Assembly: GCF_000150275.1 (NCBI RefSeq)
Contig: NW_002060947.1
Coordinates: 356,695 to 420,694 of the forward strand
Source: Trichoplax adhaerens
Lineage: Eukaryota > Animalia > Placozoa
Direction: 5' to 3'
Length of the DNA stretch: 64,000 bases
Shown here: positions 8,667 through 55,722 of the stretch, piece by piece
Numbering within the stretch: position 1 is the first letter of the stretch
Layout: the number at the start of each line of letters is the position of its first letter
Made by a program: the position numbers and the translations under genes
The notes under the pieces: model-generated
Told to the model about the DNA's origin: nothing
The model's database searches: none
Seen by the model: the letters and a program-made list of their open reading frames with translations, nothing else

Positions 8667-11600
8667 ATGAAGTATATTACTGCTGCTTGTATCCTGCAAT
8701 CTATACTTTGTACCCTAGGTAAAATGTATGCGAACTCATAGATAACACAGAGTAATTCTATTTCAAAAGTCGATCTAAAAGAATTGACGATAACATCTTT
8801 AATAGTTTAAGACATTGTTATTTTACTAGGAAGCCGCCATGCAGTGTTGCTCTACAGCCACATTTCTAAGCAGATTCTAAATTTTAAATCATTGCCATAG
8901 CTCTTTGTAAGAGATATTAAATAGCAAGATAAGCTTATATAGGCAGTTTACTAAATCGATGATTTTGTAGTATGGCGCGCTTAATAGAAAACTTTAGAGA
9001 ACTGAACGGTACCATACCTGTTGCTTTTAGTGAAGATCAAGAAAGAACACGGAGACACACAGATCATTGCATTTAATAACATCGTAAATCTAGCTGCACA
9101 ATCTTTAGTATAATTTATGTATTCATTAAATACTAACAGGCCTTTTATTGCCACCGGTTTTCAGTAATATAAAGCCAAGTTTTTAGAATAATTTTTTGAT
9201 ATCTAATCTATTTGATAGTTTTTTATCAAAAATCCAATTGTTATGATCGATCTAAAATATATAATGATAATAGTATATTAATCTATCCCTTGGAATCCTC
9301 ATGACTTGATCAGCTACTATAATATTCTTATTTTTAAAGTTGTTAACACTGCTTCAGTTGATCTAAGTTACCTTAAATTTATAAAATTAAATCCCAGTCT
9401 ATTTCTCTCTATAACAGTTTATACTCAGTGCCCGACTCCTTGCAAATGTCCTGATTCCAAAACAATCGACTGTTCATCCACTAACAGTATACCGCGCCCA
9501 CCTACGAAGCTTACTCAGTATACCAATTTGTAAGTTTATTTTATGTTCAAATTATTAACTGGAAAACGATCTCCATTCGATACTATTATTGATAGTATTC
9601 CGACTAAAAATTAATCATACTGTCACAAAACAGCTTTGCAACAAGATAACGCAATATACGATCAATAAGTCAATTCCTTGAACCACGTATCAAGGAACGA
9701 TATCTGCACTATCACGAACACTTTTGCTCTACTAGCAGACTACACAAAGACTTAAACGCCTCGTATTTTACGTTAAACACTAAGTTGGAGAATTCACTTT
9801 ATTGCACGATATACTGCATTTATATACTACTTCTCAATAGTTCATGAGTCATAGTTAATACAATTAACCTCGGAATCATTTACTGAATTAGATATTAATT
9901 TTAGCTGCTGCTCCCTTAATGCAGACAACAGTATTTACAAACATAGACATGTAATGACTAATACAGAATAGTCAGATTACGATATGTCCTATCACGGAAT
10001 ATTTCCATGATAATTTACAGTCTACCATAAGTAAATTACAATCACAATGATTCAAACTGTAAGTAGATGATTTGCATTCCCCATTATAACTATTAATTTC
10101 AGTATGTGTATAAGTGTCACTGTCATAAAAAGTCAGTGCTATATTAAAACACAGTATATCCAAATTAGAAGTTAACTAAATAAGGATAGTCTAATAGAAT
10201 TATCCTAACATAGTTATTTCTACTGCAACACAGTATTCAACACTGTAACACATACGTATGTAAGTTCTAATTTTGATACAAAATCTTGATAGATATACAG
10301 TACAAAGATCACAGTATAGTCATTGAAGATGACAGTAGAGAATATTTATAACTCTTCTACTCGGATTTACTGTTGTCGATAAACGTAACTTATTTAATCG
10401 AGAAAAACCAATGAAAATAGTTTTATAAGCACTATTTATATCTGGACTATTTTTAAGCAATCTTTTAAATTTTATGAAGAAATTTCTGATTAAAATATAT
10501 TCGTTCTTTGCCAAGATTGTTTTTGCTATGAAACCTCTTAATAATAATAACTTAAATTCGAGGTCGTTTATTTATATCATACCAACTTTGGATTGGAAAG
10601 TCATCATTCGTTGTAATTTAATTCTATTGACGATATATATTGCAAAATGTAGCCTTTCAATAAATTAATTGCCGCTAAACTGGATTTAATCGGTTTACTT
10701 TGATAGCATAATGAGAGGGACTCAATTATCCAATATTCCTTATAATGCTTTTGAAAACTATCCTTCCTTACTTCATATGTAAGACATCCGTTCACTATTT
10801 AATCAGATAAAGTATTAATATAATTAAATTTCAAATTATTGTATTTATGATAGTTTAAATAATCATTAATAATTAATCGAACGAATGCGATAATAATATT
10901 TTAATCAGCCAATCTAATTTCAATTTGGGATTACTCTTATGCCTTAAAGTTATAGTTGGTATAATCTAATATTCAATAAATTGATATAAAAGTAGATTAG
11001 CTTAACACCATCTGTAAATAAAGGCATCATCGTAAGTGTGCAGATTCTTTCTAGCAAAGTTTTAACATCAAAACTATATAATCAAAAATTATAGAGATAT
11101 GAAGCAAAATCAAATCAGAAGTGTATCCTCTCAAGCCTTTGATAAAATCCTCTTTCTATCTTCGCTGTAACTATTTTACAATTAATTCATGTAAAGTGGT
11201 TTTATGAATTTGATTCTAGAGTACTTAATATGCCGATATAAGATTCTTAAAATGCCAACAATAACATTAGATTATATAGTTTTACAGTACTAAATCCATA
11301 TACTAACGCTATGACGATTTATGACTGTTTTTTTGATATTATTCTTAAGTGATCTGTCTAATAACAAGTTAACAGCCATGCCCGGTAATTTGTTTGTCAG
11401 AATAAGTACATTAGCAGAACTGTAAGTACTTTGAACTAAAATATCGATCAATTTCGTTGTTTATTTTTATTACAGTTAGACATTTTACGAAACTTGCTAT
11501 GATTTGTATATTGTATAAGGGTAAGCTGCAAGTCATAACTGTGCAATTAACAATTCTTTAGATTCTTGAGCAATAACAACATTCAAACAATCGATAGTAA

Positions 11601-14600
11601 CGCTTTTAAGAGTTTAGATTCCTTAAAAATACTGTAAGTAAGCTGTAGCTTTCCTTCACTACATTAACTTAAGAAAATGTAAAACTGATTGAATTTACAT
11701 ATCTTTCTTCAGAAAGCTTGATAATAACGCCATCACTAAAATCCCATACAATACCTTGAAGAATCTAAAGCAGATCTCAACATTGTAAGTAGATATTTCG
11801 AGAAGAGTTTTTGTTAGCAATGATACTTCAACTTTATAAATCTCCACAACAAATTATATTGTGTCCCAATGCAATTATAATTATAAATTTAATTTAAGAA
11901 CTGGACGAAATAAATTTTTCTAAACCATAATATCTGTTATTATTGAAAAAATGTGCATATAGGAATTTGAAAAACAACTCTTTTTCTAAAATTGAAAGCA
12001 ACAACTTCAATTTACCAACATTAAGTATATTGTATGTGATAAATTGTATATTTGGAGAATTCTTCAATGGAAAATTTTATTTGCAAAACTATCAGTCAAC
12101 TTTGTGAAAATAGATTTGAAAATTTTGTACCTACTGATTAATTAGATGAAAATGAAAGCTGATATAGGAACTACTTCATTTGCAGGTATCTTAATTTTAA
12201 TAAAATTAATCAAATTCCGGACAGCGCATTTACTGGAGCTATTAATTTAAAAATCCTGTAAGAATAATCTATATCAATTTTATTTGACCGATGCATTCGT
12301 AATTATCGTATAAACTTAATTTATACGCTTAATAAAGTATAGGTGCTGTATTTATTCCTAATAATTTCGATTGTTACAAAAGCCTGAAAAAGATTTTTTA
12401 TAAGCAACGTAAAATTTAAATCGCTCAAACAGTGCATTTAATAATAATTACTATTGATCTTTACGTCTCTTACGAAGGGATTTACAATCAAATCGTATTG
12501 CAGCCATTAGCAAGAATTTATTGCAGCCTGCTAACTTATTAAAATTGATGTAAGTCAAACTGGATGTGTTAGGTAATAATCTGCAGATATAAATGGCGTG
12601 TACTGTTACCATGTACTATATATTTGGGGCTGATAAGGATACGGAATTAACTCAAAGAATTGACATAGGGCTTATCATACCATCCCTTATACTTTAACAA
12701 TTTGCAATAGCGTATGATACTCAGTGACAATATAAATTAAATTTTAACTTTTTCAGCTCGCTAAACAGAAATCGTATCACTAACATTGAAGATGGCTCTT
12801 TTAATTCCAATCTTATGCTGGAACACATGTTAGTATCTTCAGGTTTCTTCTAATAGAAATAGAATTTTTATTTACTATATACCTTATGAAACTGTGCATA
12901 TTAAAGTATGCCATTCTTGCTCTAATGGATATCTTCTATTGCTTTAATGCCATAATACCACTTAATTTGGTCACTATAGTGATTTAAATGGGAATATGTT
13001 GACCAAAATCTCCAAGAAAACTTTTGGATCTTTATCGAAGCTTGTAGAACTGTAAGAATATAACTAAAAGCTTTAAATAGTTACCGTATATTGGCTAAAA
13101 GAATTCAAATAATATTAAACTCTAACCATTCAACTATTTTTAATTTGAGCATATTGCTATATCAAATTAAACGAATCAACAGTATACTCGTATCGATACC
13201 GGTAGTCACTTATCAATCAGTCAGGAAATCGTAAGCCACTTAGCTAGAAATTAAATAGATTTTGACTATCATTTCCAAATCATAAGTTACCTAGAAAAGA
13301 ATCAAATCCATTCCATCGCCGATAACGCATTTCAGTCATTGACTGCATTGCAAACACTGTAAGTTTTTTTATTTGTTTTCAGTAGCATACACGATATCTC
13401 AAGAGGCGCTGTGTTGCCGTTAAGTCACTTTCGTCTACACTCAAAGATTGCTTCAGTAGTTACCGAAATTCTTTTCAATTTTTGCAATGATTATACTCAT
13501 AGCCCAAATAATCGCATGTTCCTTTTAGCGACTTGGGGTATAATGCAATTAGCAGCATCTCAGCCAAAACATTCGCCAATTTGAAGCAACTACAGGTTCT
13601 GTAAGTAGGTTTCATTGTCTATGCTTTCGCTAGTTTGAGATCATTTTACAGCGGCTAATAATTGATTTGACGTCATTTTATTGCATAAAAGAAATGTTGC
13701 TAGATTTAAAAGTATTCTCTTTCAGAATGTTGACCTCAAATTGCGTTACAAGTATCACTGACAGCGCCTTTAAAGATTTAATGAGCCTGAAGACCTTGTA
13801 ATAGTTTTAAAATTGCAGCATACTTTATTAGAATAATTGTGTCACATTTGATTTTAAAACTCTCATATACATTAAATTTTATCCCATTATGTGTTAGCAT
13901 TTTCCTCCTTATATCTCAGTTTATGATGTAAATTAAATCTGATAGGCTGCTGTCTTCTAATCGCCTTACTGTTATTAAGGACAATACACTTAAAGGCTTG
14001 AATAATCTCGTCTTCATGTAAGGTTTACTTTTTCATTACCGAAACTATAAAATTACCTAATGTCTAAAATAATTCCAAGTAACTACGCGAACTTAATTTT
14101 AGTACAGCTAACTGATCAATTTGTGTAATGGTTTTATTTAGAAATCTATTTAATAACTATTTAGCCTGTACTTCATCTAAGGCGTTTACCAGTGCTACTA
14201 AGCTGCAAACTCTGTAAGCTTCATTTATAACGAGAAAAAATGATTTAGTACAATTGTAAAAGTAATGATTCGGTAAATTATTTAACATGCAGACATAGCA
14301 ACTTTTCTAAAGCCTGCTGTGGCATTCCAGCATCCGTTACTTGCATGCCACGCGTGCCTGCCAATTGTGCGGGAAATTCTGGGACTACATGTTTAAATGT
14401 TATGGCAACTCCACCGCCAGCATCTGGAATGTGCAGTAGGAGGTAATATAAAATTTAAAATAGCTTCCATAACTTAATTAATTAATAAACTTCATACTTT
14501 AAGTCTGCTAACGTCATAACTATAAACTTCAAGTGCGGCGTAAATGGCAGTCAGTAATATCATATCAGAAGGCACACTTAGAACATTCGACATCATAATC

Positions 14601-14776
14601 TTCCAATTTAATGTAACATAAGTTTCATTAACGTTTCATTTTTAATTCAATCATATCAAAGCATACCTCCAACTGGTACAACCAACAACGCCGTAAGGAC
14701 GGAAAATAAAGCAAATCAAATCATGATCTTTGCTATTTCAATTGCTATAACTCTATTATCTACAATGTCTGCATAA
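8667..14776 (+). CDS. Extracellular LRR protein 1 (signal peptide, LRRNT, 15 LRRs, 6-Cys cap, short stalk, GPI-type tail), ~501 aa
   Basis: Manual splicing. Signal peptide 8667-8718 (MKYITAACILQSILCTL). LRRNT 9418-9529 (QCPTPCKCPDSKTIDCS). LRR exons start at 10707, 11095, 11350, 11562, 11713, 11963 (69 nt), 12186, 12478, 12757, 12980, 13287, 13529, 13726, 13946 and 14142; all others are 72 nt, bounded by AG and GT, phase 2 (e.g. FLSNNNIQTIDSNAFKSLDSLKIL). Cap 14293-14442 (HSNFSKACCGIPASVTCMPR...GMCSR). Terminal exon 14662-14776 (IPPTGTTNNAVRTENKANQIMIFAISIAITLLSTMSA*). Confidence 0.88.
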
Positions 14777-16624: not shown

Positions 16625-19600
16625 ATGAAGATCAAAGCCATATTATTCATCATTTTGGTAGTATACCCCTCAGCAGGTATTCCTTTTGGAAGATAGGTTG
16701 TGCTGATACTTATTAATTCCTATTCAACTCACTAATCAGCCGTTACTTGTTTAAATGTGCATCGCCAAATTGATCGCTGAACCGAAATCGATCAATTTTT
16801 TATTAATATCGACAATTATGGACCTAGCGATAAAGTCGTAGGATATTGAAGTATATCAATATCGAAGTTTTATTACCTTACCCTACTTTTACTTTATCAG
16901 ATAATACATTTCCGAAATTTTAATATCAACAGATGGTCCTTAAAACTCCTTCCACTATTCTCTCAATAGGATCCTCGAACTTTTATCTTTCATAAAAATC
17001 CGATTTTTAGATCTAAAGAGAAAAATTACTAGAATGAGCGATAAAGTTTAATTCTAGCTGTAAAGTACCGGTACAAAAAAAATCGAATATGAGCCCTGTC
17101 AATTTTAAATATCATAGTGCACAAGTAAATGCTATAATTTTTCCCCTGAATATCGCTGGGATAGCCTGCAAATGTGAACTCCGCTAGTCATTGTAAAACC
17201 TATAGAGATTTACAGTTACAGTTTGTCTCTAAATAATCTAATCAGCATCAGATAGCCGCCCAGAAAACTAAAATATCGATAGAACTAATTATCATTAGCC
17301 AGCAAACCTTGCTAAAGTTAATTATTTAAGCGAAATTGTTGAATCGACTTAGTTCCACTTAATCGTTTCAATATACTTTAGCCATTCGTATCGCATTATA
17401 TCGCCAATAAAATTTTTCTCTGCTTTATTTTATGTAGAGAGTAAATTTCTGCACTACCCTCTATAGTTCATTTTCTTCAACAAGATTGATGCATTGTTTA
17501 GACTTCTTGCTAACTAGATAATATCTTTCATTTAATAACGATGCATAGTGTTCCTACAATGTCTACCTAACTGTACATGTCCTAGCAAAGCAACCATTAT
17601 TTGCAAGGGATCTCAGATAGGTCAAATACCAATGCCTAACACATCCATGTCGCAAGTCACTACCTTGTATGTAAAAACTCTTTTGTTTCGTTACAGCGCA
17701 CTACATCAGACTCTAATGTATATCTAGAAATAATATAATCAAAGTTATTTTTTTGGATATTAGTACATTGCAAAACACAGCAATTAAATCTGTGCCAGCC
17801 TCTGCTTTCATTAATTTTCCCAATGTCGCCCACATGTAAGTAGAAATAATCTTGCGACATTATCAGTTTGTTAAAGATAGAGCTTATAATATGAGCAAAA
17901 TAAGATTATCGCAATTATTTTAAATGCAATTTACAATCTTTAGAGTTAGTTACAGCAATTTATTTTATCAATACCATTCTAAACATTTTATAAAATTATA
18001 TAAAATTGCTTTATCGATTACCTTGGCAAATATCATGTTTGTGGGATTGACCTGATTGTTGGGCAGAAATATGAAGGGTAATGCTATCAATACTATTGCA
18101 GTTGGAGCCTTTAGCGGACTAACTGCCGTTTCATCTATGTAAGATATTCTACCTTTTAATTTCATACTACTTTACGACGAGGTAAAACTGTTTCTTTCTA
18201 TAAAAGGATTAAAAATCTAATGATGCTCTTAAATATAACGTTTTCTAGAGATTTAACTCATAATCAACTCTCAGTTTTGAAGAATAACACGTTTAAGACT
18301 CTCAATCATCTTACTGAATTGTAAGCTCTATTTGCATTTCATTCTAATGATATACAGTACATATCTTTTTCTAATGTATAATATGAACGTGACCGACTTC
18401 GCATACGGTCACGTTCTATATATATACTGACTTTCATAAGCTACCAATATATATTTAAATCGATCATTTACCCAAATTAGGATTTTGACTTCCAATCAAA
18501 TTTCCAGCGTTGAAAACAACGCATTTGCTGGACTAGCTGCTTTAACTAATCTGTAGGTTTTTATACTTGATTTCTTTTAATTCAAAATTACAGCATAAAC
18601 TAATCTACTATATATTATATCTTTACGTTACTTGAAGAACTCATGTATTACAGTAATTCTTCATGGTGCCATATTTATTTAGCTAAAGCTTACGGTAACT
18701 TACCGAGCATGGATTACTAACGCAGAAAACTATAGTCAATTTATCGAGTAAATTAAATAGCAGAAGTTAACACAGGCAATAGATGTATAACTATAGTACA
18801 TTAGTATTAGAATTTTAATTTCTAGCTAAGGCGTTAACATCAACAATTTGAATTGTATATTAGTTCCTTTTCTTAGTGTCGTATTTTTAGCGCTTATAAG
18901 GTAGGTAAGCATACTTGGATTACAATCTTTAGTTGTAGTATTGATTTAAATAATGAAATTTTCAAAATTCGAACTACTGTTCCGATGCCGCTGGCAAATA
19001 GTTGAAATTAACACCTGAGATTATGCTATGCTATTTAATTTAATAAGTCGAACGTTATAGTAGTGTAATGGTTATTCTGTTTTATATTAACTTTTCGAGG
19101 CGACTAGATGATAATAAACTGAAGACTGTACCGAAAATTCCTTTGAAATCCTTACCAAGTCTTACCAATTTGTAATTATTGAGCAATCATCTTTATAGTT
19201 ATCGAACTTATCAATTATTAACGAAATGTTTAAGATGATCATTTTCATTAGAGTTACCCTACATTAAAATATGGGAAAATACTCGTATAGAATTTTATCT
19301 GATGTTCAGAATAGCTATATTTTATATTTAAAAAGTTAAGATTATCATTTAAAACTTACCGGTACTTAATTTAAAAGTATGTATTATTAATCTGCCAACA
19401 TTTTCACTGATGCAGTTCCTGTTATGAATCGTCTCCAGTTTACGAAAGTATATAACACAAAATGCAATCCAAATTTTCGCCAGTGACTTTACTATAATTC
19501 GTTTAACCCAATCTCTTCTTTCAGCAAGTCTTTAAAGTGATCTACTCTCGTAGATCGAAACTTTATCGTAAATATCGCTCCTTCCAGATTAGTTTATCTA

Positions 19601-22600
19601 GCGTCTTTGCAAGATTATAGTACCTTTTCAGCTATCTCAAAGATATCGTGTAATACTCCTATCTTATATAGAAGGAATAATCACAGCTATAGCAAATTAC
19701 GATAGATAACCATACTCTCTAGCTAAGTGTAATCAGTTTATGATATCGCTGCTAAGTCACTTTTTCGGAAGAATTTATGAATCATGAATTTAAAACCCTT
19801 AAATCTCAAACCAATACATTTTTTCCATCAATTTAAAATCGCTTTAAGAACATAAAATTAAATGTGATGGCTAAGGTATGAATACGTTAGCAATTATATT
19901 GTATTATAAATTTGCTAATACTGCTATAAAACATTTTTAGGAATTTAGCTGGAAATTCATTATCCGCCCTCACGCCTGGAAATTTTCAGCTCCCAAAAGT
20001 CACTACTCTGTAAAGTTTTCTAATTTTTTTCTAAAAAAATTCAATGCACCTTGCAAGGAATAGGACTTTCAAATAATAAATCATTTAGATACTCTAAAAA
20101 ATTGTTATTGCTTTAATTATATTTAAATCTTGGCCCTGAGTAAAATATTTTATACTCAATTCGGCTAGCATCTTATCCAATAATGCCATCGCCAGCATTG
20201 CAGATGACACATTCAACGCTATGTCAATGCTTCAGATTTTGTAAGCATCCTAATTGTATTCATGTGATAAATTTTGGCATGAAATTTTACTAACTTTCGA
20301 AGCCTGATGTGTTAATAATGTATAATGTATATGCATGGTTAATCCATATAATTTTTTGCCTCTAAATTTAGACAGCACATACTAAGAGAATATTTTAAAT
20401 TAATAACGTTGTCAAATTTAGGCAATTAGACAAAAACCAAATCCGTGCTCTACACGATAGAACATTCACATCCATACCAAAATTACAAAAATTGTAAGAA
20501 ATAGATTTATGAACTGTATTTAATTTTGTATATCATCGCTGTAATTAATTTCTTAACTTTAAAATCTTAAGTACACATTTTCAAATATCAAGTGATTTTC
20601 TCGCCACTTATTCTGTTCTAAATCAATCATTTTAAAACTCTCAAAGCACTAAACCGAGTAATCCTGCATTTTAAATTGTATTAATTAAATCTAGAAATTT
20701 AAAGAATAACGTGATTACTACACTATCATCCGGATGCTTCAAGCCCATCAATCAGCTGAATTACCTGTGAGTTATGCTAAAATAGAAGCACAAAGCATAC
20801 TGATATTAATTTAATCGATTGATAATAAAAAACTTACATAATTTAAAATATTAATTAATCAATGAACTATCAATTAATACTATTGTATTTTTCTTTTTTC
20901 AAATTGTTAAGAAATCTGAACCAGAACGCTTTAACAGCAATTACCTCTACGACTTTTTCTGCTCTAACTCAACTAACAGACTTGTAAGACTGAATTTAGA
21001 TGCGTACGCACTTTCGTTAGCCTAAACAGTCAAAATTTTAAAGATTACAACCCAATTAGTTACTATAGCTTACTCTTTGAGCTATCTACATTTAGCTATT
21101 CTACTTTTATAATATTTGTTGGACAGGATTATGGCGGCCAATCATATATCTTCGGTAGCTCCTGGAAGCTTTCAAGCATTGACCAAGCTACGAAATCTGT
21201 AAATTATTGTAACAGAATCTTTACAGTCAATTAGTATTTTTAATTAACTTCGTACATTTACTAATAGCTGCAGCGTTCATAATAACGCCAATATACGGAT
21301 ACGTTTTATTCGGATGAGGACCATAACTTTTCTTCGTATATTCCCATATAGATTTCTAGACGGAAATCGATTAGAATATTTATGCAGCAATACGCTTAAA
21401 AACGTTAACAATCTGGTGTACTTGTAAGTATTACTGGTCGAGAATTGATTATTTCAGTTCAAAAAAAACAAAATTTAAAGATTGACCAGCAATAAATTAT
21501 TATTTTTAAGGCAGGCGTATTCAGATGTATTAAATAGATATATCTTCAGAAGTAGGATAGTGCAGTAGCTATAAACCATCTTCTCTTTCTGCCAGTTTTA
21601 GTGATGTTGTATCATTGTGATAAAATCCAATCCTAAAAACCCCAAAGTTGTAAATAATTAGAACTTTATCAGATCTAATACAAAGACTAGCTACAAACAG
21701 CTCTACTCTAGCCGAATACAACTACGGAAAGACTTCTAGAAAGAACAATCAGATAATCTAATGTCTTCTGCTTTTATGCTCTCCGAAGCTTTCGCAGTTA
21801 CTTTCAGCATTGCAGCATTCTATCATATTTTACACATATTCAACTTATTATTAGTCACAATGTTAAATAGTGAACCATCATTAATTCAATATAGAAATGA
21901 TGACATAATTTTCGTAGATATTATTCCTACCTCTTAAAGTACAATGAACTAAGCGTATCATAACATATGATTTACAATTCTATTTCTACCTCTAACCTTA
22001 TTAGTAGCTCAACACCTTGCTTTATTTAGTCATCTGTACTCTAGCATAGAGTCTATCCTTACTGTCGATAATTATGGGCTACTAAATATATCATAAGATA
22101 AATATAGAAAAGACACTACCGTATATCATACTAAGATGGCTAATAGTCTACAATCATAATACTAAGTTACTTTACAATCATTTACATAGTATATATCTGC
22201 ATTCTATTATTCAGCTATAAAATAACGTTCATGATGAAAATTAATTATGATCATTGCTATAAGGGGTCTATCTGCAAATGGTCTGTTAGCGATTGCTGAT
22301 AATGCCTTTAGCAGCCAGGGAAAAGTAACTGATTTGTAAGTCAATAGAAGCCTTATGTTTTATAATAAAATTACATGATTCCTAGTAATTTGATAATGCA
22401 GTATTATATTTACTTGGATTGCTGAAATGGCTGATTAAATTGATTACATTTAGTGAGTGTACTTTACGAGATGAGGAATTTTGCTCAAGATATAAAACAG
22501 ATTTTAAATTAATGTCATAAGTGCAAATAATTACGAATAGATTGCTTGACTTCAATCAACTCACTGCTATTGGTGATAAGACTTTTGCGGGCTTGAAAAA

Positions 22601-30900: not shown

Positions 30901-31100
30901 TTTCCGCTTATCGAACGTAAAATTTCATGTTTAATTCAACAATTAGTTATACGACATTTTATCAAGTCTGCTGTCAACTCCCAACTACTGTAACTTGCGA
31001 TTATGTTGGCGCCTTTAATTGTTCTGAACATCAACTGCCAAATTCTTGTGCAGGCAATAATTCTAATGCAATTCTATCTCGTTGTAAACTATTGAGGTGA
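24990..31100 (+). CDS. Extracellular LRR protein 3 (signal peptide, LRRNT, 14 LRRs, 6-Cys cap; terminal exon uncertain)
   Basis: Signal peptide 24990-25041 (MKTVQLVILLIFFQAQT). LRRNT 26832-26943 (QCPKKCKCIFGQVSCS). LRR exons start at 27154, 27388, 27633, 27843, 28161 (75 nt), 28389 (69 nt), 28567, 28806, 29042, 29318, 29600, 29860, 30470 and 30778. Cap 30947-31096 (FYQVCCQLPTTVTCDY...SRCKLL). Read-through of the last donor gives AGG TGA (stop ends 31100). No clean in-phase stalk/GPI exon was found downstream. Confidence 0.82.
25590..25935. repeat. Degenerate ~170-bp tandem duplication in intron 1 of LRR gene 3
   Basis: ataaatctcaatgcattcctttaacgtattaacga...aatctatt...cttttaagaacatttt versus ataaatctcaatggattcttttaatgcattaacga...aatctatt...cttttaaaaacatttt. 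Confidence 0.75.
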
Positions 31101-42100: not shown

Positions 42101-42229
42101 AATACAGTATCACCAACAACAGATGACGCAATTTCGATCATATCGTTTGCCAATTACATTAGTATTCTATTTTCATTTTTGCTTTCCAGGGTGCTAACAG
42201 CGCAAGATCCAATTCATATTTCGTTGTGA
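33132..42229 (+). CDS. Extracellular LRR protein 4 (signal peptide, LRRNT, 16 LRRs, 6-Cys cap, stalk, hydrophobic tail), ~545 aa
   Basis: Signal peptide 33132-33198 (MAVISIRKIAAIISFIVLYLSS). LRRNT 36342-36450 (QCPASCHCNTTHVVCS). LRR exons start at 36590, 37067, 37364, 38113 (69 nt), 38399, 39007 (78 nt), 39424 (69 nt), 39737, 39928, 40092, 40396, 40589, 40927, 41177, 41315 and 41480. Cap 41641-41790 (STNFPTSCCQLSPKVAC...GHCRV). Terminal exon 42070-42229 (VPSTHFPSTQNTVSPTTDDAISIISFANYISILFSFLLSRVLTAQDPIHISL*). Confidence 0.86.
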
Positions 42230-45033: not shown

Positions 45034-48000
45034 ATGAAGTCTAAAACATCCATCCTGGTATTATCTATGATATTTATTCAAGCCGGTAAGGAGTATAGCC
45101 TAAACTATATCCTGTCATAAAATATTGTCTGGAAATATTCGAAAAAATGTTCTAAAAAATCGACTTGCACCGATTAAGTAATTTATTGTTATGGAAAAGT
45201 TGATACTGGTAAGACAGCAAAGACAGGTTATTGTTATAACTTTAAGCCAAATTGGTATAGGGTAATGTCGTTAAAATGATGTTAATTGGATAACTAAAAT
45301 CACTTCGACGATTCTATAATCCTTATAATTCGTGTGATTATCTATGACGATTCACCTTCAATACCGAACATTTATAAAAGCGCACATTTTTAGGAACTTC
45401 ATCGATCAGTCAAACTGTGATAGTCAGGAAATGATTTAATACAGTACAGCCATTCAGTATTTTATTATAGCGGTAAATAAGATCATATCGATCGAACTTT
45501 CGCAAATAGCATCCATACTCGCAACATTTCGACTGCATTAAAAACATCTTGTAATTCGAAAGCGTTCTAATACGATTTCAATCCGTTTTCGATACACAAG
45601 AAAACAACAGCTGTTAGCGGCGATCATTAATTTAAAAAATCAAATCAAGTCTGCATAAAACATTTCATGATCGAAAAAATCAGTTAATTCAGCTAATAGT
45701 TATTCTATATTCGTGATTTTATTGCTGATTGCAGTCTAGTTTGCTGTAGGGAAGTGACTTTAAGTCATATTGATGCTGATATTAAGTTATACAGATGTCC
45801 AATAATTTAGTGAGTACATGATGATACGGTCAACTAGAGTGCGTGCTGTACTAGTGTAAAATTTAGACTCATGCTACGTAAGAAATAACTTAGGACCTAG
45901 CATAATAGCGCAAGCTATTACACCGGTAAAGTTACGAATTTGCATTTGGAAATTGCCATTTTGATAGATTTGAGTTAGTCTTATCCGAAGAATACTAGCT
46001 TAAAGTCGAGTAATAATTTGTCAATTTGACAGTACTACTATCAATTCGTCCACCTTTTCTAGAGTAAGGAAATTGAGAAATAATGCAGTATTCTTTATGC
46101 GACTCCGTTAAGATTCCCTTCTCTGTCGTAAAAGCAGCTCTAAAAAAATTCTTTCTGTATTTACTGTTTCTTGGGTAGGAATGATTGTTTAAGGCAAAAA
46201 CTGTTGCCGATTGTCTAATTAATTGAGATCTAGTTTCTGTTCCGAACACTTATTGTTACACACATCAACTAGTTCCATATTACAACATTTGTAAATCTTT
46301 CATTATATTCAAAAATTTTAGCTTTGATCGCCATAACAAAAGACTAAATTTAGCGTAGCTTACGATCTATTCTTGCTCTAATGGTCCATTACAATCGAAT
46401 TTCAGTATTCCGTATCGAGTTACAAATAATATCTATTATAAGCACGATAGCAGAAATAGAAAGTAATTTTAATTAATAATAAACGTCAAACTAAATTGTT
46501 GATTTTCTAAATCAATCGTTAATTTTAATAAGGATAGTGTGAAAAATACTATGATGTCCAAGTAAATATATGTCTAGGATCATTTTGATCACTGAGAAGA
46601 TATTAGCTCAAAAAGTAATCACTGAAATCTTTTCACAAGTGTGAGAATATTCGAAAATGGTATTTAAAGCGGCCTAGCTTCGATAAAACGGCTCATATAC
46701 TATTATTCTCCTTTCAATTTTATTTCGACAAAAATGCATAACACATCAGTGTCCTCGCTTTGAATTTTGTAATATTATTAAGTAAGAGCATTTATTGCTG
46801 CGATATAAATATCATCGACAAATACTAAGAATTATTTTCAATTTTTCTCAGTTATTCGTGTGATGGCAGATGGTAGATAATTTGACTTGATTACAAAAAA
46901 TTAATAAGATAACGCTTAAATGTACTATAATAACATTTGAAATGTGTTTAATGGCGAATAAGATACCAAAGTTACAGTTCGCTTTGTGCCATCATGTGAT
47001 TGTAAGTGTAATTAGTCCACTATAATCTGGATGATTAACAGTTTCAAAACACCTGCTGCAAGATTTCTATTCAAGAATTTGATAATTAACGATATTAAAT
47101 GCATAAAACAATAAACTTCTTGACGTTTATTGCTCAAGAACAATAAAATCAAGCCATGCTTCATAAATCATAAGAATGAAATAAACAAGTAAACACTTGA
47201 AGAATGATATTATACCACCGAAGAGAAACGGATAAAAAAAATATGAAACTTAGTTAATTTAAATTTTTATAAGGTTGTAAGAAGGATAGTACATAAAGTT
47301 CAACATCAACTTTAAATGCCATTGTTATTGTCTAATCATGAGTTCAATAAAGCGTTTTGGTAGATATTGAGTACTTATTTACCTTATATATATTCAATTC
47401 ATCCTGAAAACCGTAGAACATTTGTTCTACAATAACAATTATACTCTAAAAGGAATTAATCTCCATCGCACGGTAATAAGTTAATTCCATTAACGTTTCC
47501 TTGCTATGGATTAGGATATAAACAATATATAATGGATATGCAATGCAAATAATTACGTTTCATATTGCATAATAATCTAAAGAATGTCTTACTAAAGTCA
47601 AAGAATTATTTCTCTACAATTGCTACAGTATGCACTTTCGGATACAGATTAATATTGCAATAACTTCTACAATAGTAACTGTCCATAAAAGAAGACTAAT
47701 TCTATCTACACTACGCTGAGTATATAGCGTAAAATTAGATCGATATTTATAGCGACCCATCTATGGTAATTAAAGATTTCAATAACATCTTAATATAACA
47801 ATAAATAGTTTATCTACTCTAACTTTGTTCAAATTAATGAAACGAATTTACTGGGCCGCTTCAATTTTATACTTAAACTTCTGTTTCCTTATAATTCCTG
47901 CATGCTGAAGAAATTCTTCTTACACTTTATTCGCTAAACCTAAAATTACTCTTGCCATACCTATATGTTCACGCCAATCTAAGTTCTAAAAATGTTATGA

Positions 48001-51000
48001 AATAGGTATTAACTAATTATAGAGGGTAGCCCTTTATTACTAGAGTAACATTATCTTAATGTAGCTACAGGACTTTCTTCACTTACTTTGCAACAAATTA
48101 GATCTAAACTAGAACAATAGCCAGGTCAAATTACTGCTATAAATTTTTTAATATCATATTTTTACTTAACGCACTTTGCTTGTTGCGATAAAAGTGCCTC
48201 ACAATAACTATCTTAGTCAAATGGTATTTTAAAGAAGGCTTTTATTGCAAGGTAGTAAGAGTTGTAGAGCAATAATTAATTACTACAAGAATCTAGATTA
48301 AAATCTAAAGTATTCCGAGCTCAAAGCAAAGTGAAGTCTCTTCTCTCCGGTAAGCTCATCTCAGCACTTCTTACGTACATTTCGTTAAATCTATTTATGA
48401 CGACTTGATTAACGTACAATCAGACATGGGTCATTAAACGAAATGCTTTTCTCAAATAGTACATCATTATCTTCTACAACGTAAATTATTCTACTTAATA
48501 TGTCGCCACTATTCTATTAATGTCTAGCCCCTTCCTTCGAAGGGCATCTTAACAATTACAGCGTTTCTAGCCACATAAATCTTATATCTTAATTAGTAAA
48601 CAGTCTAATATTAGTCATCAGGAATTTCTAATACTGTACTTAGCAATCATCTAATATTAGCTTCACGACAATATTTATTCAGGGTAACCCAACTATATCA
48701 AATATAGCTATTAAAAAAATCAAATATAGCTATCCTTACAATCAAATGTGGGTGCATCACCACACTAATATACTCGTGTATGTTAATAGACGTTTTATAA
48801 AAATAATTTGAATTTCTTATAGCTTTTTAGTTTACATGCAATGCCTATGGATATTTCTCTGCATAATTGGTAACGTAACTTGTTAATAAAGTTTTACATA
48901 GAAATAATTCGAATTTATTTTTGGGTATTAGCTTATTCACAGTGTCCATCGATGTGCCTTTGCAAAATCAACAGCGTAACCTGTTCATATGCAAATCAGA
49001 TACCTAAGCCTAAGAAGCCTATGCCTACAGTCCATAATTTGTAAGTCGTTACGCAGTAAATTCAGTACTGTACAATGATATAACTATCACTACTACAAGT
49101 TTAACCTAATATATGTTTATACCTGTAGCTCTAATTAAAAGGTGATTTAATTTTAAATAGTAAAGAAAAAATTTTTTTCATTTGATAATCATCTAGAACG
49201 GCAAGATTTACCGAAATAGCTAACATCAGCAAAGATGATTTCATTAACTATCCAAGCTTGCTGCATTTGTAAGCACTGTAGAGATAAAACATTATATTAA
49301 TTATATATGTAAGTATTGATATAATATACTGTACAGTATAGTAAAATATGTTCACTGCCGGTACTGTTACTATATGCAACACTCTGCTCTAGCTATTAGA
49401 TACTGAAAAAGCTTTAATTAATGCTGTAGTTTTATATCTTACTGCATGAGCTACAGTGAGATTGAGGTAGAATCACTAGTCTCTAAACAAATTTTGTTCT
49501 ATTTCCTAATCTTTAACCCAAGTAGGCTATAAAATAGAAAGCACTTATTGTTGCTATTAAATATTTCTAGAAATCTTCAAAATAACAAAATTGACAACAT
49601 TGAAATAGGAGCTTTTAATAGAGTAACGTCACTTATATCCATGTAAGTACAGATATATGAATGGCTCTTAGTTATTATTCATTTAAACCTTAATGTATAA
49701 ATAAGATATTTCATGAAAATGGTAAATCCATTCAATGACTAATTATATAACATACGCGTATATTAAGTGATATTAGGACTGTAGCAAATACTGTATAAAT
49801 CTATATATAACATTGAGCAAAGCAGTAATTTCGACAATTAAAATATTAACTTGTCTTATAAATTTAATTAGAAATTTGTCAAATAACCGCCTAACAGTAC
49901 TAAAGAGCGAAAGATTTGAAAGCCTAAGCCGATTAGTAAATTTGTAAGATGTGTTCTATGCTATAAAAATTTTCTCATACTAATCTAGCAAAGGCTATTT
50001 GAGATAACAATCAAGGTCACATTATCAACTTTGAATAAAAATTCTTCGACGACTCGTTAGAAATTTGATATTTAATCGGATTGAAATCATACAGAAGGAT
50101 GCTTTTCTAGGATTATCCACCATATTTTCAATGTAAGACACTAGTTTATTTCATATTAAATATTAATCGATGGGGTTAAACGGTATTGGTAAATAACAGC
50201 AACAAACTGATCAACTTATGTAGACAATTCGCATCTAAAACACTAATCCTTGTTTGGATTTTCTATCCTCTCAATTAATGATCAAATAGCAACTGTCATT
50301 GCTATTACAGTCCGATTCTTGTATTTATCGGCAGTATAAATTCACTTTTAATATTATTTACTTGCTTCATTATGAGATTGTGTATTTCTAAATTCGAATT
50401 TGAATCATCATAAACGTTGCTTATGTAGTATTAAGATATTCCTAAGTTCATTTCTTGCCTTATGATTTTAATCATAATTTATTGGCGGAACGAATGCATA
50501 CCACATACCATACTTCGGTATCTAGTAAATTGCAAATATTTCCACCTTGAAAACTTTGGCTTTATTGTAGATTATGTTATATTTTCTTTAGTAACCACTC
50601 ATACTAATTTCTGTAGACTTAAACATTATTTCCTAACAAACTATTTTATTGAATAGTTTCTAAATATGTAAAATAAATTACCCTTAGTTTATATGTTACT
50701 ATCATATCGTGAACGAAAACGCTCAGTTTTTCCATAATATGGGGAGAGATACATCTTTTATCATTATATTGGAGTTGAATCGTTTTCAACTCATTTATAT
50801 CAATTACATCGTATGAAAATTAATTACAACTGCAAAGACATGAATAGTTGTCATGAAAGTATGCCAGTAATGCGTAGTATGAATGTGTAACTAATCTAAA
50901 AACTGCCTAATTTCAACCGATCACGCTATATTCTGTATATGTTATCGCTTTTTAAGATATATGCCACTTTCGAAAGGAGGATACTAAAAATTGGATAATT

Positions 51001-54000
51001 TTCCTAATTTTAGCGATTTACGTTTCAACTATCTCACCTCTATTACAGAAACTAATTNNNNNNNNNNNNNNNNNNNNNNNNNNNNNNNNNNNNNNNNNNN
51101 NNNNNNNNNNNNNNNNNNNNNNNNNNNNNNNNNNNNNNNNNNNNNNNNNNNNNNNNNNNNNNATTTCTTCTTCATAACATTATCACATAATATCTGTAAG
51201 TCTTAACATATGGTAACATTCGTATTAAAGAAATTGTTTTAATCCACAAACATCTTTACTCTACTTTATCTTTAACCATAATAACTAGTTATATTCTGAG
51301 TTTAATGCAATAGTTGGAGCTTAATTAACTAAAAGTACGATCAAGCATTGCAGCACTAATATTTGCAAAGGTTAACTGCATTCACTTGACTAATTTCAGA
51401 CATTTGTTAGCTAATAACATATCCATCTTTAATAGCCGCGATTTTAAGGGGATTCCAAATCTGGAACATTTGTAAGTCTCCATAGTTCTAATAAGCTAGT
51501 AATCGCTACCGTTTTAATCTATTCACCTAGTATATATCGAATTAATCGTTGTTATAAAATCTACAAATCAAAAGGATAGTAGAAATTTAAACTCTGTGCG
51601 TTACAATTTAGTAGCAAGTTCTGATTAATGCCGCATTTGAAATATGACAATAGTACTTCAGTGATGTCTATAATACGAGTGTTAAATAAAAAAAATAGCA
51701 GTACAGAAATATTTTAATATTTTTTAAATGAGATTGCTTTACCAACAGAAGACTACGTTTTAACTATGTCTAGTCAGTTAATTGTTTCATAAATAATGTT
51801 GCTATCATGCAGTTCAAATAAAAAATTATCGACGTAAGTTTTTACATATTTTATCCTTTTTAAGCATTTATTAACTAGTTAAATAAAATAACGATATACA
51901 AATTCTACAAAAATGTTTTATTGCTAGAGATTTACAACATCAGCAGCATGCAATGTCTGCAATATCCTATGATGAACTTAAATCTTTAACTAAATTAACC
52001 CAACTGTAAGTAAAGGAATCCTACAAATGACACGAGTGAGAAAGTTATTGAAGTAAGATAGGTTAAGCTATTGCCATATATATTTCCGTAATAGGCAAGC
52101 CATTATAAATATACGCCTAAACTATAGCCGAATATATTCTTAATAAAGAACAATTCAATAGTATCCTGTTTAAATTAATTAACTAGCAACTGAATAAATA
52201 TTCTATTACAAAATCTGTAGAAAACTAGGATACAATGCTATTAAGACTCTTGGAAACGGCGAATTAATGCTCCCAGCTTTAAAATCACTGTAAGCTGTAA
52301 ACGAAAAAGCAATTTTTTTTAAAAATAAAGGCTAAAGAATTTCTTGGCATTATGCTACCCTCCTTAAACTGAATAGCCTTAAACTGAACAAAATTTGTGC
52401 TTGCTGTTTTCGTCAATAAATTTTGATTGCCTAATCATTTATAGGAGAATAGAGAATAACAAACTGAAATTCATATATCAGCACGACCTTGATGGAATGC
52501 CCAATTTAGAAATACTGTAAGTATGCATTTGACGTTAGGAGACTAAAATAAAATGGCTGTTTAATCATCCGATGCATTAGTATTTGATTATAGACAGCTT
52601 ATACGAGTAATATATTTGTCCAGTAGCTTAATCATTAGTCAACGCCTATCAAACTTCTGATCATTAGTATTTCATAATATTGAAATCAAATTAATTCTAG
52701 CATCAAAGAAATAACTTGGTTAATAACTATTTAGTTACAAACTACTAGTATCATTTTTAACATAAATAATGTCATGAAAACAAATTATTTTCTTAGTAAC
52801 ATGAACTACAACAAAATTACAAAAATCCAAGATAGCGCGTTTAAATTGACGACAAAGCTGCGGTTTCTGTAAGCATGAATTAACTCTTTCAAGTCAATAC
52901 AACCTTTATTGTTCGAGTATTCATTATTTTAATTTAACAATAGCGGCTATACTAAAATGTTTTACATGGTATCATTTGCTACCTAGATATGTTGCATCAT
53001 CACAATTTATAACATTGAATGCGGTGCTTTAATTGGATATATATGCCATCATAGCTTTAAGAATTTTTTCTAGCGTCATATTTAGTATGTATAGTTCATA
53101 TATACGTGTATCCAATTTAGGCAGCTGTCTACAAATCGTATTAATTCATTGCCTGATAGCATATTCTCAAATCTGGTTAAATTAGAAGTCATGTATGTAT
53201 CGCAAGATTTTAGTAGAAAATCGCCTTTTATACCTCATATTGATACTTAATCTATAGTTAGAACTATTTTCAGCCAGAAATTGGCTTTCCTAGCTCATTA
53301 GCATATTATTTGATCTTTAACTTCAAAAGTATAACGCCGTAATTCTTGATTCATATTAGGGATTTAAGTAACAATCAGTTACAACATATTTCCCATTTAC
53401 ATTTTAAAAAATCGAACAAATTGCAGCAGCTGTAAGTTAATAATGAGTCCTACCGAATGATATCTGTTTAAGTTTTTAGCTAAGAATAAATGCAACCACA
53501 TGGTACATGTGGTAAATACTAGCTTTCACTGTTAATTGGATATGCTAAAGTTCTATTTATTCCACTCTTTCAGCTACTTAAGTACCAATAATATTCATAC
53601 CATCGATAATTATAGTTTCCGAAATTTAAATAAGCTAAAACGCTTGTAAGTAAAAGCCTAATAACAAACATACGATAATTATATATAAATATTGGGGTGA
53701 AAACAGATAATAATTCGTAAGTAATGAATTTTATTGTATATATATATATATATATATAGGTTACTTACCAATCTGAACTGTTAAAATAAGTTTTAGTGTT
53801 ACAGTCACATACAACTACAAACTTACAGCTTACGGAACGAAGTAACAGTGCAGTTTATTATTTTCACCCTTTTTTACTCTTGACGTTTAATCATCTCATC
53901 TGCAACAATACTATGCGATAATCTTACCCCTTTTAATTAACTTCAGTTACTACCTTCTGCAGAGCTTTGAACATGAACGCGATAAGAATCATTACCAGTC

Positions 54001-55722
54001 AAACATTGATTGGATTGAATTCCCTGGAATCGCTGTAAGATTAGTTATTTCATTTTTGTATTAGGCGAAGCTTTACCGGCGTTGAGTGTAATAAATTAGT
54101 AACTAGCACTAATTTCACTCCATTAATCATTCCAGCTCTTTATCGATGAATTGCTTGCAGAATATCGAAGATAATGCTTTTATAACACTTCAAAGCTTAA
54201 CGTCGCTGTAAGTAAATGCATACATACGCGTGTGCTTGTCTTATGGCCTACCAATTAAAGTTCCTATATTTTATAGCATTTTAGCGAGTACATCAGTGTA
54301 GATGGCGTAATATTAAAAAATAAATATTTTGCCTTTATAAATTAAATTTAGCTTAGATATCAAAAATGAGCTCACCATCATAATAACTACGGTATTAGAG
54401 ATGATAACCTTGCGTTAATACCGATTTCTTCGTACACTTTGTCGACACTGCTCGGAAGTGTTCGAAAAATGTACAATGACGAGATCAAATTTACTGTACA
54501 TCCTACGAAGTCACAACTAAATTTATCAACTATATTGAGCGCATTACAGTGTGCTATTCTAAACCAACATATCACATAAAAATATCAAAGTAATCAAGAT
54601 ATTTCTATTTTTCTATATTTTAGAAGAATTAGTAACAATATGTTAACAACTTTAAGAAAAAACACATTTACCGGATTACGACAACTACAGTTCTTGTAAG
54701 ACTATTTATGGTGACGTAGACGTAATACTTACACAACCTGCCTTTAGTAAATTTGTTACACAAATAGCATATAAACTACATATGTATAGTAAGTAATTAA
54801 TGTATTCGTTATTATAATTTAAACTTTAGGGCTTTGCAGGATAATTATTTACAGTGTGTGTCATCCAGCGTATTTAGGCAACTTCCACAATTATTAATAG
54901 TGTAAGTTTCATTAAGTACTATTAATAAATTTATTTTTAGTTTATAAAGGTAATTTTGTCACCATAGTTTGCTAAACTAGCTTATCAAAAACTGTGCTTA
55001 CAGGGGTACCAATTTTACATCCATATGTTGTATGTTGCAAGCTAACACCACATGTTATTCTGTCGGTAAAGCTATTTGTCCAAGAAATATTAACTCATCT
55101 TCCTGTAATGTTACTATTCTACCAGCCCCTTCTATTCGATGTCCGTATAGGTAAATGATGTCCTCCTAATATAATTCTGACTATTCTGCCACAAAATTTT
55201 AGTTCTATCAAACCATGCTCAAATGTTTAAAAGCTAGTATAGGCTATGCAAATATTTATGATAAACTCGTAATATTATTCTGACTATTCTGCGACAAAAT
55301 TTTAGAACTATAGATGTTTATCAATGATTTTATATGCGCTAAACAAACATTTAGATATAAAATTTTGCTTAAACTATCAATATTAATATAATTTTTCCTT
55401 GTTAGAAGTAAACCTGAATCAACTAGCATCGATTATAATAGCAACATGATTGCCTGACTTTTTTCGCTATAATAATAGGATATCAACGTCTCCTACCCCA
55501 GCATTACAGGCATCATTACCGACCAATTCAACGCCCATTTATACAATGAATCTTACTGCAACCTTTTTCACTCCATCTACTACTAATAGCACGACCATAC
55601 CATATACTACTCATCCATCAACTTCTAGTAACGGAAGTGCCATATCTATGGTACCTATATTTCATCAGCTCAAAGTAATGGCTACCTGTATAGCAGCTCT
55701 GTATTTAATAAGTACCATTTAA
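45034..55722 (+). CDS. Extracellular LRR protein 5 (signal peptide, LRRNT, 17 LRRs, 6-Cys cap, long mucin-like stalk, GPI-type tail), ~590 aa; one exon crosses an assembly gap
   Basis: Signal peptide 45034-45085 (MKSKTSILVLSMIFIQA). LRRNT 48932-49040 (QCPSMCLCKINSVTCS). LRR exons start at 49197, 49571, 49872, 50061, 51014 (interrupted by Ns), 51400, 51928 (78 nt), 52221 (69 nt), 52445, 52797, 53121, 53360, 53574, 53963, 54136, 54624 and 54830. Cap 55004-55150 (GTNFTSICCMLQANTTC...IRCPY). Terminal exon 55479-55722 (ISTSPTPALQASLPTNSTP...STSSNGSAISMVPIFHQLKVMATCIAALYLISTI*). Confidence 0.85.
51058..51162. other. Assembly gap (105 N) inside an LRR exon of gene 5
   Basis: Run of N. The exon DLRFNYLTSITETN... 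runs into it, and a CT|GTAAG donor follows at ~51195. Confidence 0.98.
53737..53758. repeat. (TA)n microsatellite
   Basis: Intronic run of about 11 TA units. Confidence 0.9.
55167..55310. repeat. ~42-bp imperfect direct repeat in the last intron of LRR gene 5
   Basis: taatataattctgactattctgccacaaaattttagttctat (~55167) and taatattattctgactattctgcgacaaaattttagaactat (~55270). Confidence 0.8.

What the first reader, a model, noticed from the sequence alone, without database searches (positions are those of the whole stretch)
8667..55722. Hidden tandem array of five VLR-like, GPI-type LRR receptor genes
Seen: five head-to-tail + strand genes, nearly invisible to the ORF track. Each encodes a signal peptide, a CPxxCxC LRRNT, 14-17 ~24-aa LRRs, a Cys-rich cap and (4 of 5) an S/T/P stalk with a small-residue omega site (NNA, GAA, DDA, NGS) and hydrophobic C-terminus. 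None has a TIR, kinase or 7TM domain. The paralogs keep the LRR framework but differ strongly at non-consensus positions. Established: SP-LRRNT-LRRn-LRRCT-Thr/Pro stalk-GPI is the domain order of lamprey/hagfish variable lymphocyte receptors. Inference: a germline-encoded, diversifying family of surface recognition receptors in an early-branching animal, convergent with VLR architecture.
Basis: partly seen in the sequence, partly recalled or inferred. Interest (0 to 1): 0.85.

Follow-up and report, generated by a model that had tools for sequence, protein, structure and literature searches.

The report
Tandem placozoan surface LRR-only genes

Summary
The window (Trichoplax adhaerens, contig C1410) carries five head-to-tail + strand genes. 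Each has a signal-peptide exon, an LRRNT exon, 14-17 single-repeat exons (mostly 72 nt, AG/GT, all phase 2), a six-cysteine cap exon and a tail exon. For gene 5, RNA contigs from three public runs confirm 14 predicted junctions and a last exon that runs unspliced through the stop codon. The assembly gap lies inside one LRR exon. A DNA-like contig, RNA contigs and the Trichoplax sp. H2 genome all replace it with 23 bases, in frame. The genome holds seven such genes: these five and a pair on contig C1389. The cap matches no Pfam family and was found only in placozoan sequences. Three window tails (genes 1, 2, 5) and both C1389 tails fit GPI-signal rules; gene 4 is ambiguous and gene 3 unresolved. 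The VLR reading holds for domain order only, which Nogo receptor shares. Nothing indicates diversifying selection: concave and convex variable sites diverge equally, and orthologue comparisons show purifying selection. Kamm et al. 2019 (PMC6321704, Table S1) probably already list three of these genes as LRR-plus-TM candidates for a bipartite TLR-like receptor. Public gene models are mis-spliced. The scan had not reported this family on other DNA.

The parts
8667..14776 (+). Gene 1 (G1): 19 exons, 501 aa, 15 LRR
   Evidence: The frame stays open across all joins. No RNA was laid on this gene.
16625..23337 (+). Gene 2 (G2): 19 exons, 512 aa, 15 LRR
24990..31096 (+). Gene 3 (G3): 17 exons found, at least 440 aa, 14 LRR; tail unresolved
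31234..31363 (+). Candidate last exon of G3 (TM-like, no stalk); unconfirmed
   Evidence: This is the only phase-2 acceptor downstream of the cap that opens a frame with a 16-residue hydrophobic stretch, followed by a KK-led tail of about 26 residues. It would give about 483 aa, close to the 488 aa of the probable H2 model.
36342..42229 (+). Gene 4 (G4): 19 exons found, at least 523 aa, 16 LRR; exon 1 not found
   Evidence: The H2 neighbour gene of 543 aa ends at this stop region.
45034..55722 (+). Gene 5 (G5): 22 exons, 591 aa, 17 LRR; RNA-confirmed from 50061 to the stop
   Evidence: The junctions are in runs X12, X5 and X6.
51058..51193 (.). Assembly gap (105 N) plus 31 nt of doubtful sequence, inside a 69-nt LRR exon of G5
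   Evidence: The X1 contig, the RNA contigs X5 and X12 and the H2 genome at L006:12223-12245 all replace this stretch with 23 nt. The exon then reads in frame.

Best explanation
These are five of the seven members of a gene family so far seen only in placozoans. The genes encode secreted, glycosylated proteins made of LRRs alone. A signal peptide directs each protein into the ER. An LRRNT cap, 14-17 typical 24-residue LRRs and a family-specific six-cysteine C-terminal cap form a curved solenoid that binds a ligand. A short to long Ser/Thr/Pro stalk holds it off the membrane. In most members the C-terminus looks like a GPI-attachment signal: a small-residue triplet, a spacer of about 9-12 residues, and 13-18 hydrophobic residues running to the last residue. 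The mature protein would then be lipid-anchored with no cytoplasmic part, so it would have to act through a partner in the same membrane or as an adhesion or ligand-presenting molecule. Shown here: the gene structure, the splicing and 3' end of G5, the family size, the absence of signalling domains, and purifying selection. Inferred: the signal peptide, the GPI anchoring and ligand binding. The array grew by tandem gene duplication. LRR number changed by gain or loss of whole exons, which stays in frame because every LRR exon is symmetric (phase 2 at both ends).
For: Exon anatomy and closed frames. Spliced RNA for G5, with the last exon unspliced through the stop codon. LRR_8 scores 122 bits on the public partial model P0001, and 4 of 5 LRRNT exons give weak LRRNT hits. 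Seven cap exons are found in the genome and none elsewhere in it. The cap is found only in placozoan sequences among 1.84 billion representatives. The tail pattern (small triplet, about 9 spacer residues often ending N/D-Q, then a hydrophobic end) recurs in G1, G2, G6, G7 and in the orthologue on L005, with a looser 12-residue version in G5. The GPI transamidase subunit Gaa1 is encoded in the genome. Kamm et al. report SignalP 'SP', no TMHMM TM and a Phobius TM for the probable H2 orthologues, which is the usual behaviour of a GPI signal. The LRR part of the AlphaFold model is confident, and the best fold match is Nogo receptor, a GPI-anchored LRR protein. No TIR or 7tm_1 match lies inside the window.
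Against: No GPI predictor and no biochemistry were available, so the omega sites rest on rule of thumb. In G4 the hydrophobic stretch is followed by 14 polar residues, which suits a membrane helix with a short tail better. The only tail candidate for G3 is also TM-like. RNA was laid on G5 only, so G1-G4 rest on frame closure and homology. Exon 1 of G5 is disputed and exon 1 of G4 is missing. Two public models end G5 differently: they use a donor just before the hydrophobic end. That donor fits the consensus, and a minor isoform cannot be excluded from contigs.
Confidence: 0.62

Rival explanations
1. The protein is the same, but it is held by a single C-terminal membrane helix (type I, with almost no cytoplasmic tail) and not by a GPI anchor, as Kamm et al. 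treated the H2 models.
For: Phobius calls a TM in the probable H2 orthologues. The G4 tail has 14 polar residues after the hydrophobic stretch, and the G3 candidate has a KK-led tail.
Against: In G1, G2, G5, G6, G7 and L005 the hydrophobic run is only 13-18 residues, reaches the very last residue, and follows a conserved small-residue triplet plus spacer. TMHMM finds no TM. The last codons of G4 drift freely between T. adhaerens and H2, including a stop two codons earlier.
Confidence: 0.25
2. One reading: this is a diversifying, VLR-like repertoire of immune recognition receptors, with variability concentrated on the ligand-binding face.
For: The domain order matches. Placozoans lack true TLRs (PMC6321704). 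The paralogues are only 32-39% identical. Protein-language features of the last LRR plus cap sit nearest VLR-B fragment clusters, but with a low shared-feature count that the tool rates as chance-like.
Against: The family has only seven genes. Concave and convex x positions are equally diverged. The orthologue pair is under purifying selection, with equal pN on both faces. G5 shows 4 replacement and 9 silent differences between strains or species. There are no partial cassettes and no sign of rearrangement, and the RNA is collinear with the germline. There is no canonical LRRCT.
Confidence: 0.08
3. These proteins are the ligand-binding half of a two-part TLR-like receptor. The LRR protein would pair in the membrane with a separate TIR- or SEFIR-domain transmembrane protein, as proposed for Hydra and for Trichoplax sp. 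H2 by Kamm et al.
For: Kamm et al. list TrispH2_009860-62 as tandem genes of 478, 488 and 543 aa. The H2 gene just upstream of the G5 orthologue has 543 residues and ends at the G4 stop. By sequence, the closest solved structure is the TLR13 ectodomain, but IGFALS, LRRC15 and LGR4/5 score nearly as well.
Against: There are no functional data. No partner gene lies in the window, and no TIR match is near it. The similarity to TLR ectodomains is generic LRR similarity. Adhesion or guidance roles like those of Nogo receptor or LRRTM fit equally well.
Confidence: 0.15
4. The LRR arrays are ectodomain exons of LGR-type GPCRs or other receptors whose signalling exons lie downstream.
For: The genome holds many LRR-GPCRs (earlier notes). 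LGR4/5 ectodomains rank high in the sequence and fold searches.
Against: G5 RNA ends its reading frame in the tail exon, and contigs run on unspliced past the stop. The window has no + strand open frame above 123 aa and no 7tm_1 hit. The intergenic open frames have no Pfam match. Homologous tail exons with stop codons close G1, G2 and G4.
Confidence: 0.03

Closest known systems
Nogo-66 receptor (RTN4R) and similar GPI-anchored LRR proteins (named from general knowledge: OMgp, Drosophila connectin and chaoptin, CD14)
   Same: Signal peptide, LRRNT, a run of typical LRRs, a Cys-rich C-cap, a Ser/Thr/Pro stalk, a GPI-type C-terminal signal and no cytoplasmic domain. RTN4R is the top Foldseek match.
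   Different: No orthology: the sequence similarity is generic LRR similarity. These genes have 14-17 repeats, where the Nogo receptor ligand-binding domain is shorter. The C-cap has six cysteines starting with a CC pair and does not match Pfam LRRCT. The family was found only in placozoan sequences.
Lamprey and hagfish variable lymphocyte receptors
   Same: The order of modules and the stalk plus GPI-type end.
   Different: VLR genes are incomplete in the germline and are assembled somatically from flanking cassettes (established knowledge). These genes are complete, have one LRR per exon, and are transcribed collinearly. They have no canonical LRRCT and no concave-face hypervariability.
LRR-plus-TM candidates of Trichoplax sp. 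H2 in Kamm et al. 2019, Table S1 (TrispH2_009860-62, TrispH2_011248)
   Same: Probably the same genes: orthologues of G2-G4 and of a C1389 member. The match rests on the tandem arrangement, protein sizes and position next to the G5 orthologue.
   Different: That paper lists three tandem genes, read as TM proteins. Here the array has five genes plus a second pair, corrected exon models, a GPI-type reading of the tail, and a family-specific cap. The equivalence is inferred from size and position, not from sequence.
Ectodomains of TLR13, IGFALS, LRRC15 and LGR4/5
   Same: These are the best sequence matches among solved structures (E 1e-37 to 1e-27), with the same 24-residue typical LRR.
   Different: There is no TIR and no 7TM part. 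The matches cover repeats only, which is family-neutral similarity.

Membership tests
Variable lymphocyte receptors | Incomplete germline gene completed somatically from flanking LRR cassettes | tested here: not met
   All exons are present in order in the germline, and G5 RNA contigs join them consecutively.
Variable lymphocyte receptors | Canonical LRRCT cap | tested here: not met
   None of the five cap exons hits Pfam LRRCT even at E of 1 or less. The caps carry six Cys with a leading CC pair.
Variable lymphocyte receptors | Sequence variability concentrated on the concave face | tested here: not met
   Identity is 17.7% at concave and 20.0% at convex x positions among the paralogues. pN is 0.245 on both faces in the G6 orthologue pair.
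GPI-anchored proteins | N-terminal signal peptide | tested here: inconclusive
   Hydrophobic first exons of 52 nt (58 nt in G7) were found for G1, G2, G3, G5, G6 and G7. Kamm et al. report a SignalP 'SP' call for the probable H2 orthologues. No predictor was run here, and exon 1 of G4 was not found.
GPI-anchored proteins | C-terminal signal: small omega, omega+1 and omega+2 residues, a polar spacer, and a hydrophobic run to the last residue | tested here: inconclusive
   By rule of thumb the pattern fits G1, G2, G5, G6, G7 and the L005 orthologue. G4 is ambiguous and G3 unknown. NetGPI and PredGPI were not available.
GPI-anchored proteins | Release by PI-PLC, or a lipid anchor on the mature protein | not testable with these tools
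   This needs an experiment. The transamidase subunit Gaa1 is encoded in the genome.
Pfam LRR_8 / LRRNT extracellular LRR proteins | LRR_8 above the gathering score; LRRNT with four Cys | tested here: met
   LRR_8 scores 122 bits against a cut-off of 27 on P0001. LRRNT scores 13-17 bits, below the cut-off of 25.8, in 4 of 5 exons, but the four Cys are invariant.
LGR-type LRR GPCRs | Seven-helix domain after the LRR region | tested here: not met
   There is a stop codon in the tail exon and unspliced RNA beyond it. No 7tm_1 hit lies in the window.
Toll-like receptors | Cytoplasmic TIR domain | tested here: not met
   The genome has five weak TIR matches, and none lies in the window.

The most novel reading that the evidence does not exclude
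The seven lipid-tethered LRR proteins are the missing sensor arm of placozoan TLR-type signalling. Each would bind a microbial or self ligand and signal by pairing in the membrane with a separate SEFIR- or TIR-domain protein, much as CD14 works with TLR4 or Nogo receptor with p75. This would be a two-part receptor design at the base of animals. A weaker add-on: because every LRR exon is symmetric, exon skipping could give in-frame variants with different repeat numbers.
Probability: 0.12. Interest if true: 0.75.

Novelty: new member of a known kind. Interest (0 to 1): 0.4.

Why it matters
Placozoans keep much of the downstream TLR pathway but have no TLR, so surface LRR proteins are the obvious candidates for the missing input. 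This work gives usable gene models for the whole family of seven genes. It shows that the public models are mis-spliced, including loss of the membrane-tether end in both public models of G5. It closes an assembly gap. It also replaces 'single TM' with a testable GPI reading, which changes what kind of partner to look for. Finally, it removes an attractive but unsupported claim of VLR-like diversification.

Tried and rejected
1. A contiguous LxxLxLxxN motif search found nothing, because introns split the motif. Re-registering the motif on the exon solved this.

2. I searched for the H2 models of G1-G4 with an alignment of the public protein P0004 plus single-exon rows. Only P0004 and P0001 came back, so the result is uninformative. 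The link to TrispH2_009860-62 therefore rests on size and position.

3. The first cap profile missed the seventh gene. An LRRNT search led to it, and the widened profile then found exactly seven genes.

4. A weak cap hit on C1406 has no LRR exons around it and is chance.

5. An alignment that mixed cap rows with last-LRR rows was misaligned and was dropped.

6. The AlphaFold model of P0001 leaves the second half of the cap at low confidence, so the cap fold stays unassigned.

7. The idea that the CC cap is the LGR hinge motif came from memory. No other cap-like exon exists in this genome, which is rich in LGR-type genes, so the idea is not supported.

8. The Atlas look-alikes named VLR-B share few features and rate as chance-like.

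9. Full-text search for the gene identifiers found no paper.

10. Joined spliced models were never sent to a search or fold tool. They were built only inside scripts, for frame checks, alignment and counts. Searches went exon by exon by reference, or through the public proteins P0001 and P0004.

Full report
Source and setting. Earlier notes of this scan name the genome as Trichoplax adhaerens. I confirmed this: the public protein TRIADDRAFT_56137 (P0001) is a model of part of gene 5. The window is G000:C1410:356695-420694. It has 30% G+C and very few long open frames.

Observation. A contiguous LRR motif search failed, because each repeat is split by introns between the two leucines of LxL. 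With the motif registered on the exon, the + strand shows more than 50 units against about a dozen loose chance matches on the - strand. As exons, they are 72 nt long (a few are 69, 75 or 78), flanked by AG and GT, and always phase 2: one base closes the previous codon and two bases open the next. A profile built from them scores about 55 + strand sites at 19-33 bits, while the best - strand site scores 9.9 bits. The units fall into five clusters. Each cluster is preceded by an exon with the pattern QCPxxCxC...C. Each is followed by an exon of 144-150 nt with six invariant cysteines that begin with a CC pair. Four clusters then end in an exon that carries Ser/Thr/Pro-rich sequence, a triplet of small residues, a hydrophobic run and a stop codon. 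A first exon of exactly 52 nt (ATG, 17 codons with a hydrophobic core, one extra base, GT) lies upstream of G1, G2, G3 and G5, and also of a sixth family member elsewhere. None was found for G4. Joining the exons inside a script gives reading frames without a single internal stop: 501, 512, at least 440, at least 523 and 591 residues, with 15, 15, 14, 16 and 17 repeats.

RNA and the gap. Only one reads call was allowed, so I laid four runs on 49950-55949. X12 is recorded as RNA. X5 and X6 carry spliced contigs. X1 covers introns evenly and behaves as DNA. The RNA contigs show 14 junctions: 50132>51014, 51471>51928, 52005>52221, 52289>52445, 52516>52797, 52868>53121, 53192>53360, 53431>53574, 53645>53963, 54034>54136, 54207>54624, 54695>54830, 54901>55004 and 55146(+4)>55475(+4). 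They revealed a 78-nt exon (51928-52005) that I had missed, and they rejected a candidate at 54399-54470. X5 and X6 contigs then run unspliced from 55475 through the stop at 55722 to beyond 55949, and no loose end is reported near 55683. The gap at 51058-51162 lies inside an LRR exon that starts at 51014. X1 joins 51057 to 51194 through 23 letters. X5 reads 25 letters and then joins to 51400, and X12 agrees. The Trichoplax sp. H2 genome (locus L006, 98.5-99.3% identical to window 39178-64000) also has exactly 23 nt there. The resulting 69-nt exon is in frame and encodes a normal repeat. The 105 N and the 31 nt that follow them are therefore an assembly artefact.

Family size and spread. A profile of the cap exons finds the five window copies and one more on contig C1389. 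An LRRNT search then led to a seventh gene directly downstream of that one. A profile of all caps finds exactly these seven in the genome. G6 and G7 have the same exon design and the same kind of tail. Against 1.84 billion representative proteins, the cap profile hits only three sequences: P0001, a 54-residue fragment P0002, and an unrelated repeat protein. P0002 lies on a 2.8-kb contig of 29% G+C from another sequencing run. That contig carries six 72-nt LRR exons, the cap and a matching tail, but has no nucleotide-level match to T. adhaerens. It is most likely the G6 orthologue in a divergent placozoan. Pfam does not recognise the cap.

Public models and prior literature. P0001 (340 aa) and the H2 protein P0004 (502 aa, named LRRC15) are models of G5. 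Against the RNA they skip real exons, include a false one, and replace the hydrophobic end by an exon from beyond the stop. Kamm et al. 2019 (PMC6321704) searched H2 for LRR proteins that could form the outer half of a Hydra-like two-part TLR. Their Table S1 lists TrispH2_009860, 009861 and 009862 (478, 488 and 543 aa) as tandem genes, with a SignalP 'SP' call, no TMHMM TM and a Phobius TM. In H2, the gene just upstream of the G5 orthologue has 543 residues and ends at the G4 stop region. These three are therefore very probably the orthologues of G2-G4. Part of the array has thus been noticed before, in a supplement, as 'LRR plus TM'.

Anchor. In G1, G2, G6, G7 and the L005 orthologue, the last exon shows the same layout. 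A triplet of small residues (NNA, GAA, DGA, SGA, NGA) is followed by nine residues, most often ending in N/D-Q, and then by 13-18 hydrophobic residues that reach the final residue. G5 has NGS, a 12-residue spacer and 15 hydrophobic residues. This fits the established rules for GPI-attachment signals, and such a run is short for a membrane helix. The genome encodes Gaa1. G4 differs: 14 polar residues follow the hydrophobic part. Those last codons also drift between T. adhaerens and H2, which has its stop two codons earlier. G3 has only a TM-like candidate. GPI anchoring is an inference, and I put it at a little over one half for the family as a whole.

Selection. The paralogues are 32-39% identical and align repeat by repeat. 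They differ in repeat number by whole exons. Framework positions are 68% identical, concave-face x positions 17.7% and convex x positions 20.0%. For G6 against its distant orthologue, pN is 0.22 and pS is 0.81 (saturated), with pN 0.245 on both faces. For T. adhaerens against H2, G5 has 4 replacement and 9 silent differences, and G4 has 4 and 4. The RNA contigs give 4 replacement and 7 silent differences for G5. The numbers are small, but none points to positive selection.

What it resembles. By sequence, the repeats match TLR13, IGFALS, LRRC15, LGR4/5, LRIG1 and TLR3 ectodomains about equally. Outside placozoans the best full-length hits are podocan-type proteins at E 1e-12. An AlphaFold model of P0001 gives a confident solenoid and a half-confident cap. 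Its best fold matches are Nogo receptor, LRRTM2, LRIG1, NGL, LGR4/5 and VLR-derived repebodies. No TIR or 7tm_1 match lies in the window, and the intergenic open frames match nothing.

Verdict. This is a real, expressed, poorly annotated family of surface LRR-only proteins, probably GPI-anchored, found so far only in placozoan sequences. The domain order is that of VLRs, but equally that of Nogo receptor. The defining VLR features are absent and diversification is not supported. Function is open: a co-receptor or ligand-binding arm for a separate signalling protein is the most interesting possibility, and adhesion is the plain one.

Noticed in passing
window 56600-64000, - strand: An Apaf-1-like gene lies convergent to G5. 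An APAF1_C match sits at 62544-62846, and the H2 orthologue has 1418 aa with NB-ARC and APAF1_C. The X5 RNA contig that carries G5 runs about 1.5 kb past 55949 toward this gene, so the 3' ends may overlap.
   Followed up: partly
window 3670-4194, - strand: A 174-aa open frame matches the uracil-DNA glycosylase superfamily (UDG, E 3e-13). It is probably an exon of a TDG/MUG-type glycosylase.
   Followed up: partly
G000:C1389:498806-519614 (L001, L003, L007): A second cluster holds two more family members (G6, G7) in tandem, with the same exon design and GPI-type tails. The G6 cap is 57% identical to the G1 cap, closer than any pair within the window.
   Followed up: yes
window 51163-51193: The 31 nt after the N run are absent from the X1 contig and from the H2 genome. 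They look like an assembly artefact beside the gap.
   Followed up: yes
window 43363-43368 versus L006:4190-4506: Trichoplax sp. H2 has about 315 nt more than T. adhaerens in the G4-G5 intergenic region.
   Followed up: no
window 39178-55722, exons of G4 and G5: Silent differences between T. adhaerens and H2 are denser in exons (about 2% of silent sites in G5) than differences in introns (0.73%). Many sit at CG dinucleotides (TCG, GCG and CGG codons). The numbers are small and the pattern is unexplained.
   Followed up: no
window 42222: In H2 a C>A change turns the third-last codon of G4 into a stop. Two further replacement changes lie in the last five codons, so the extreme C-terminus of G4 is not constrained.
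   Followed up: partly
window 55683 and 56019-56078: Both public models of G5 splice from a consensus-like donor just before the hydrophobic end to a short open frame downstream. The RNA contigs laid here do not show this junction. The acceptor lies outside the stretch that was laid, but no loose end is seen at the donor.
   Followed up: partly
window 32595 and 32627: Two single unread letters (N) lie in the G3-G4 intergenic region, near one weak candidate for exon 1 of G4 (32475-32523).
   Followed up: no
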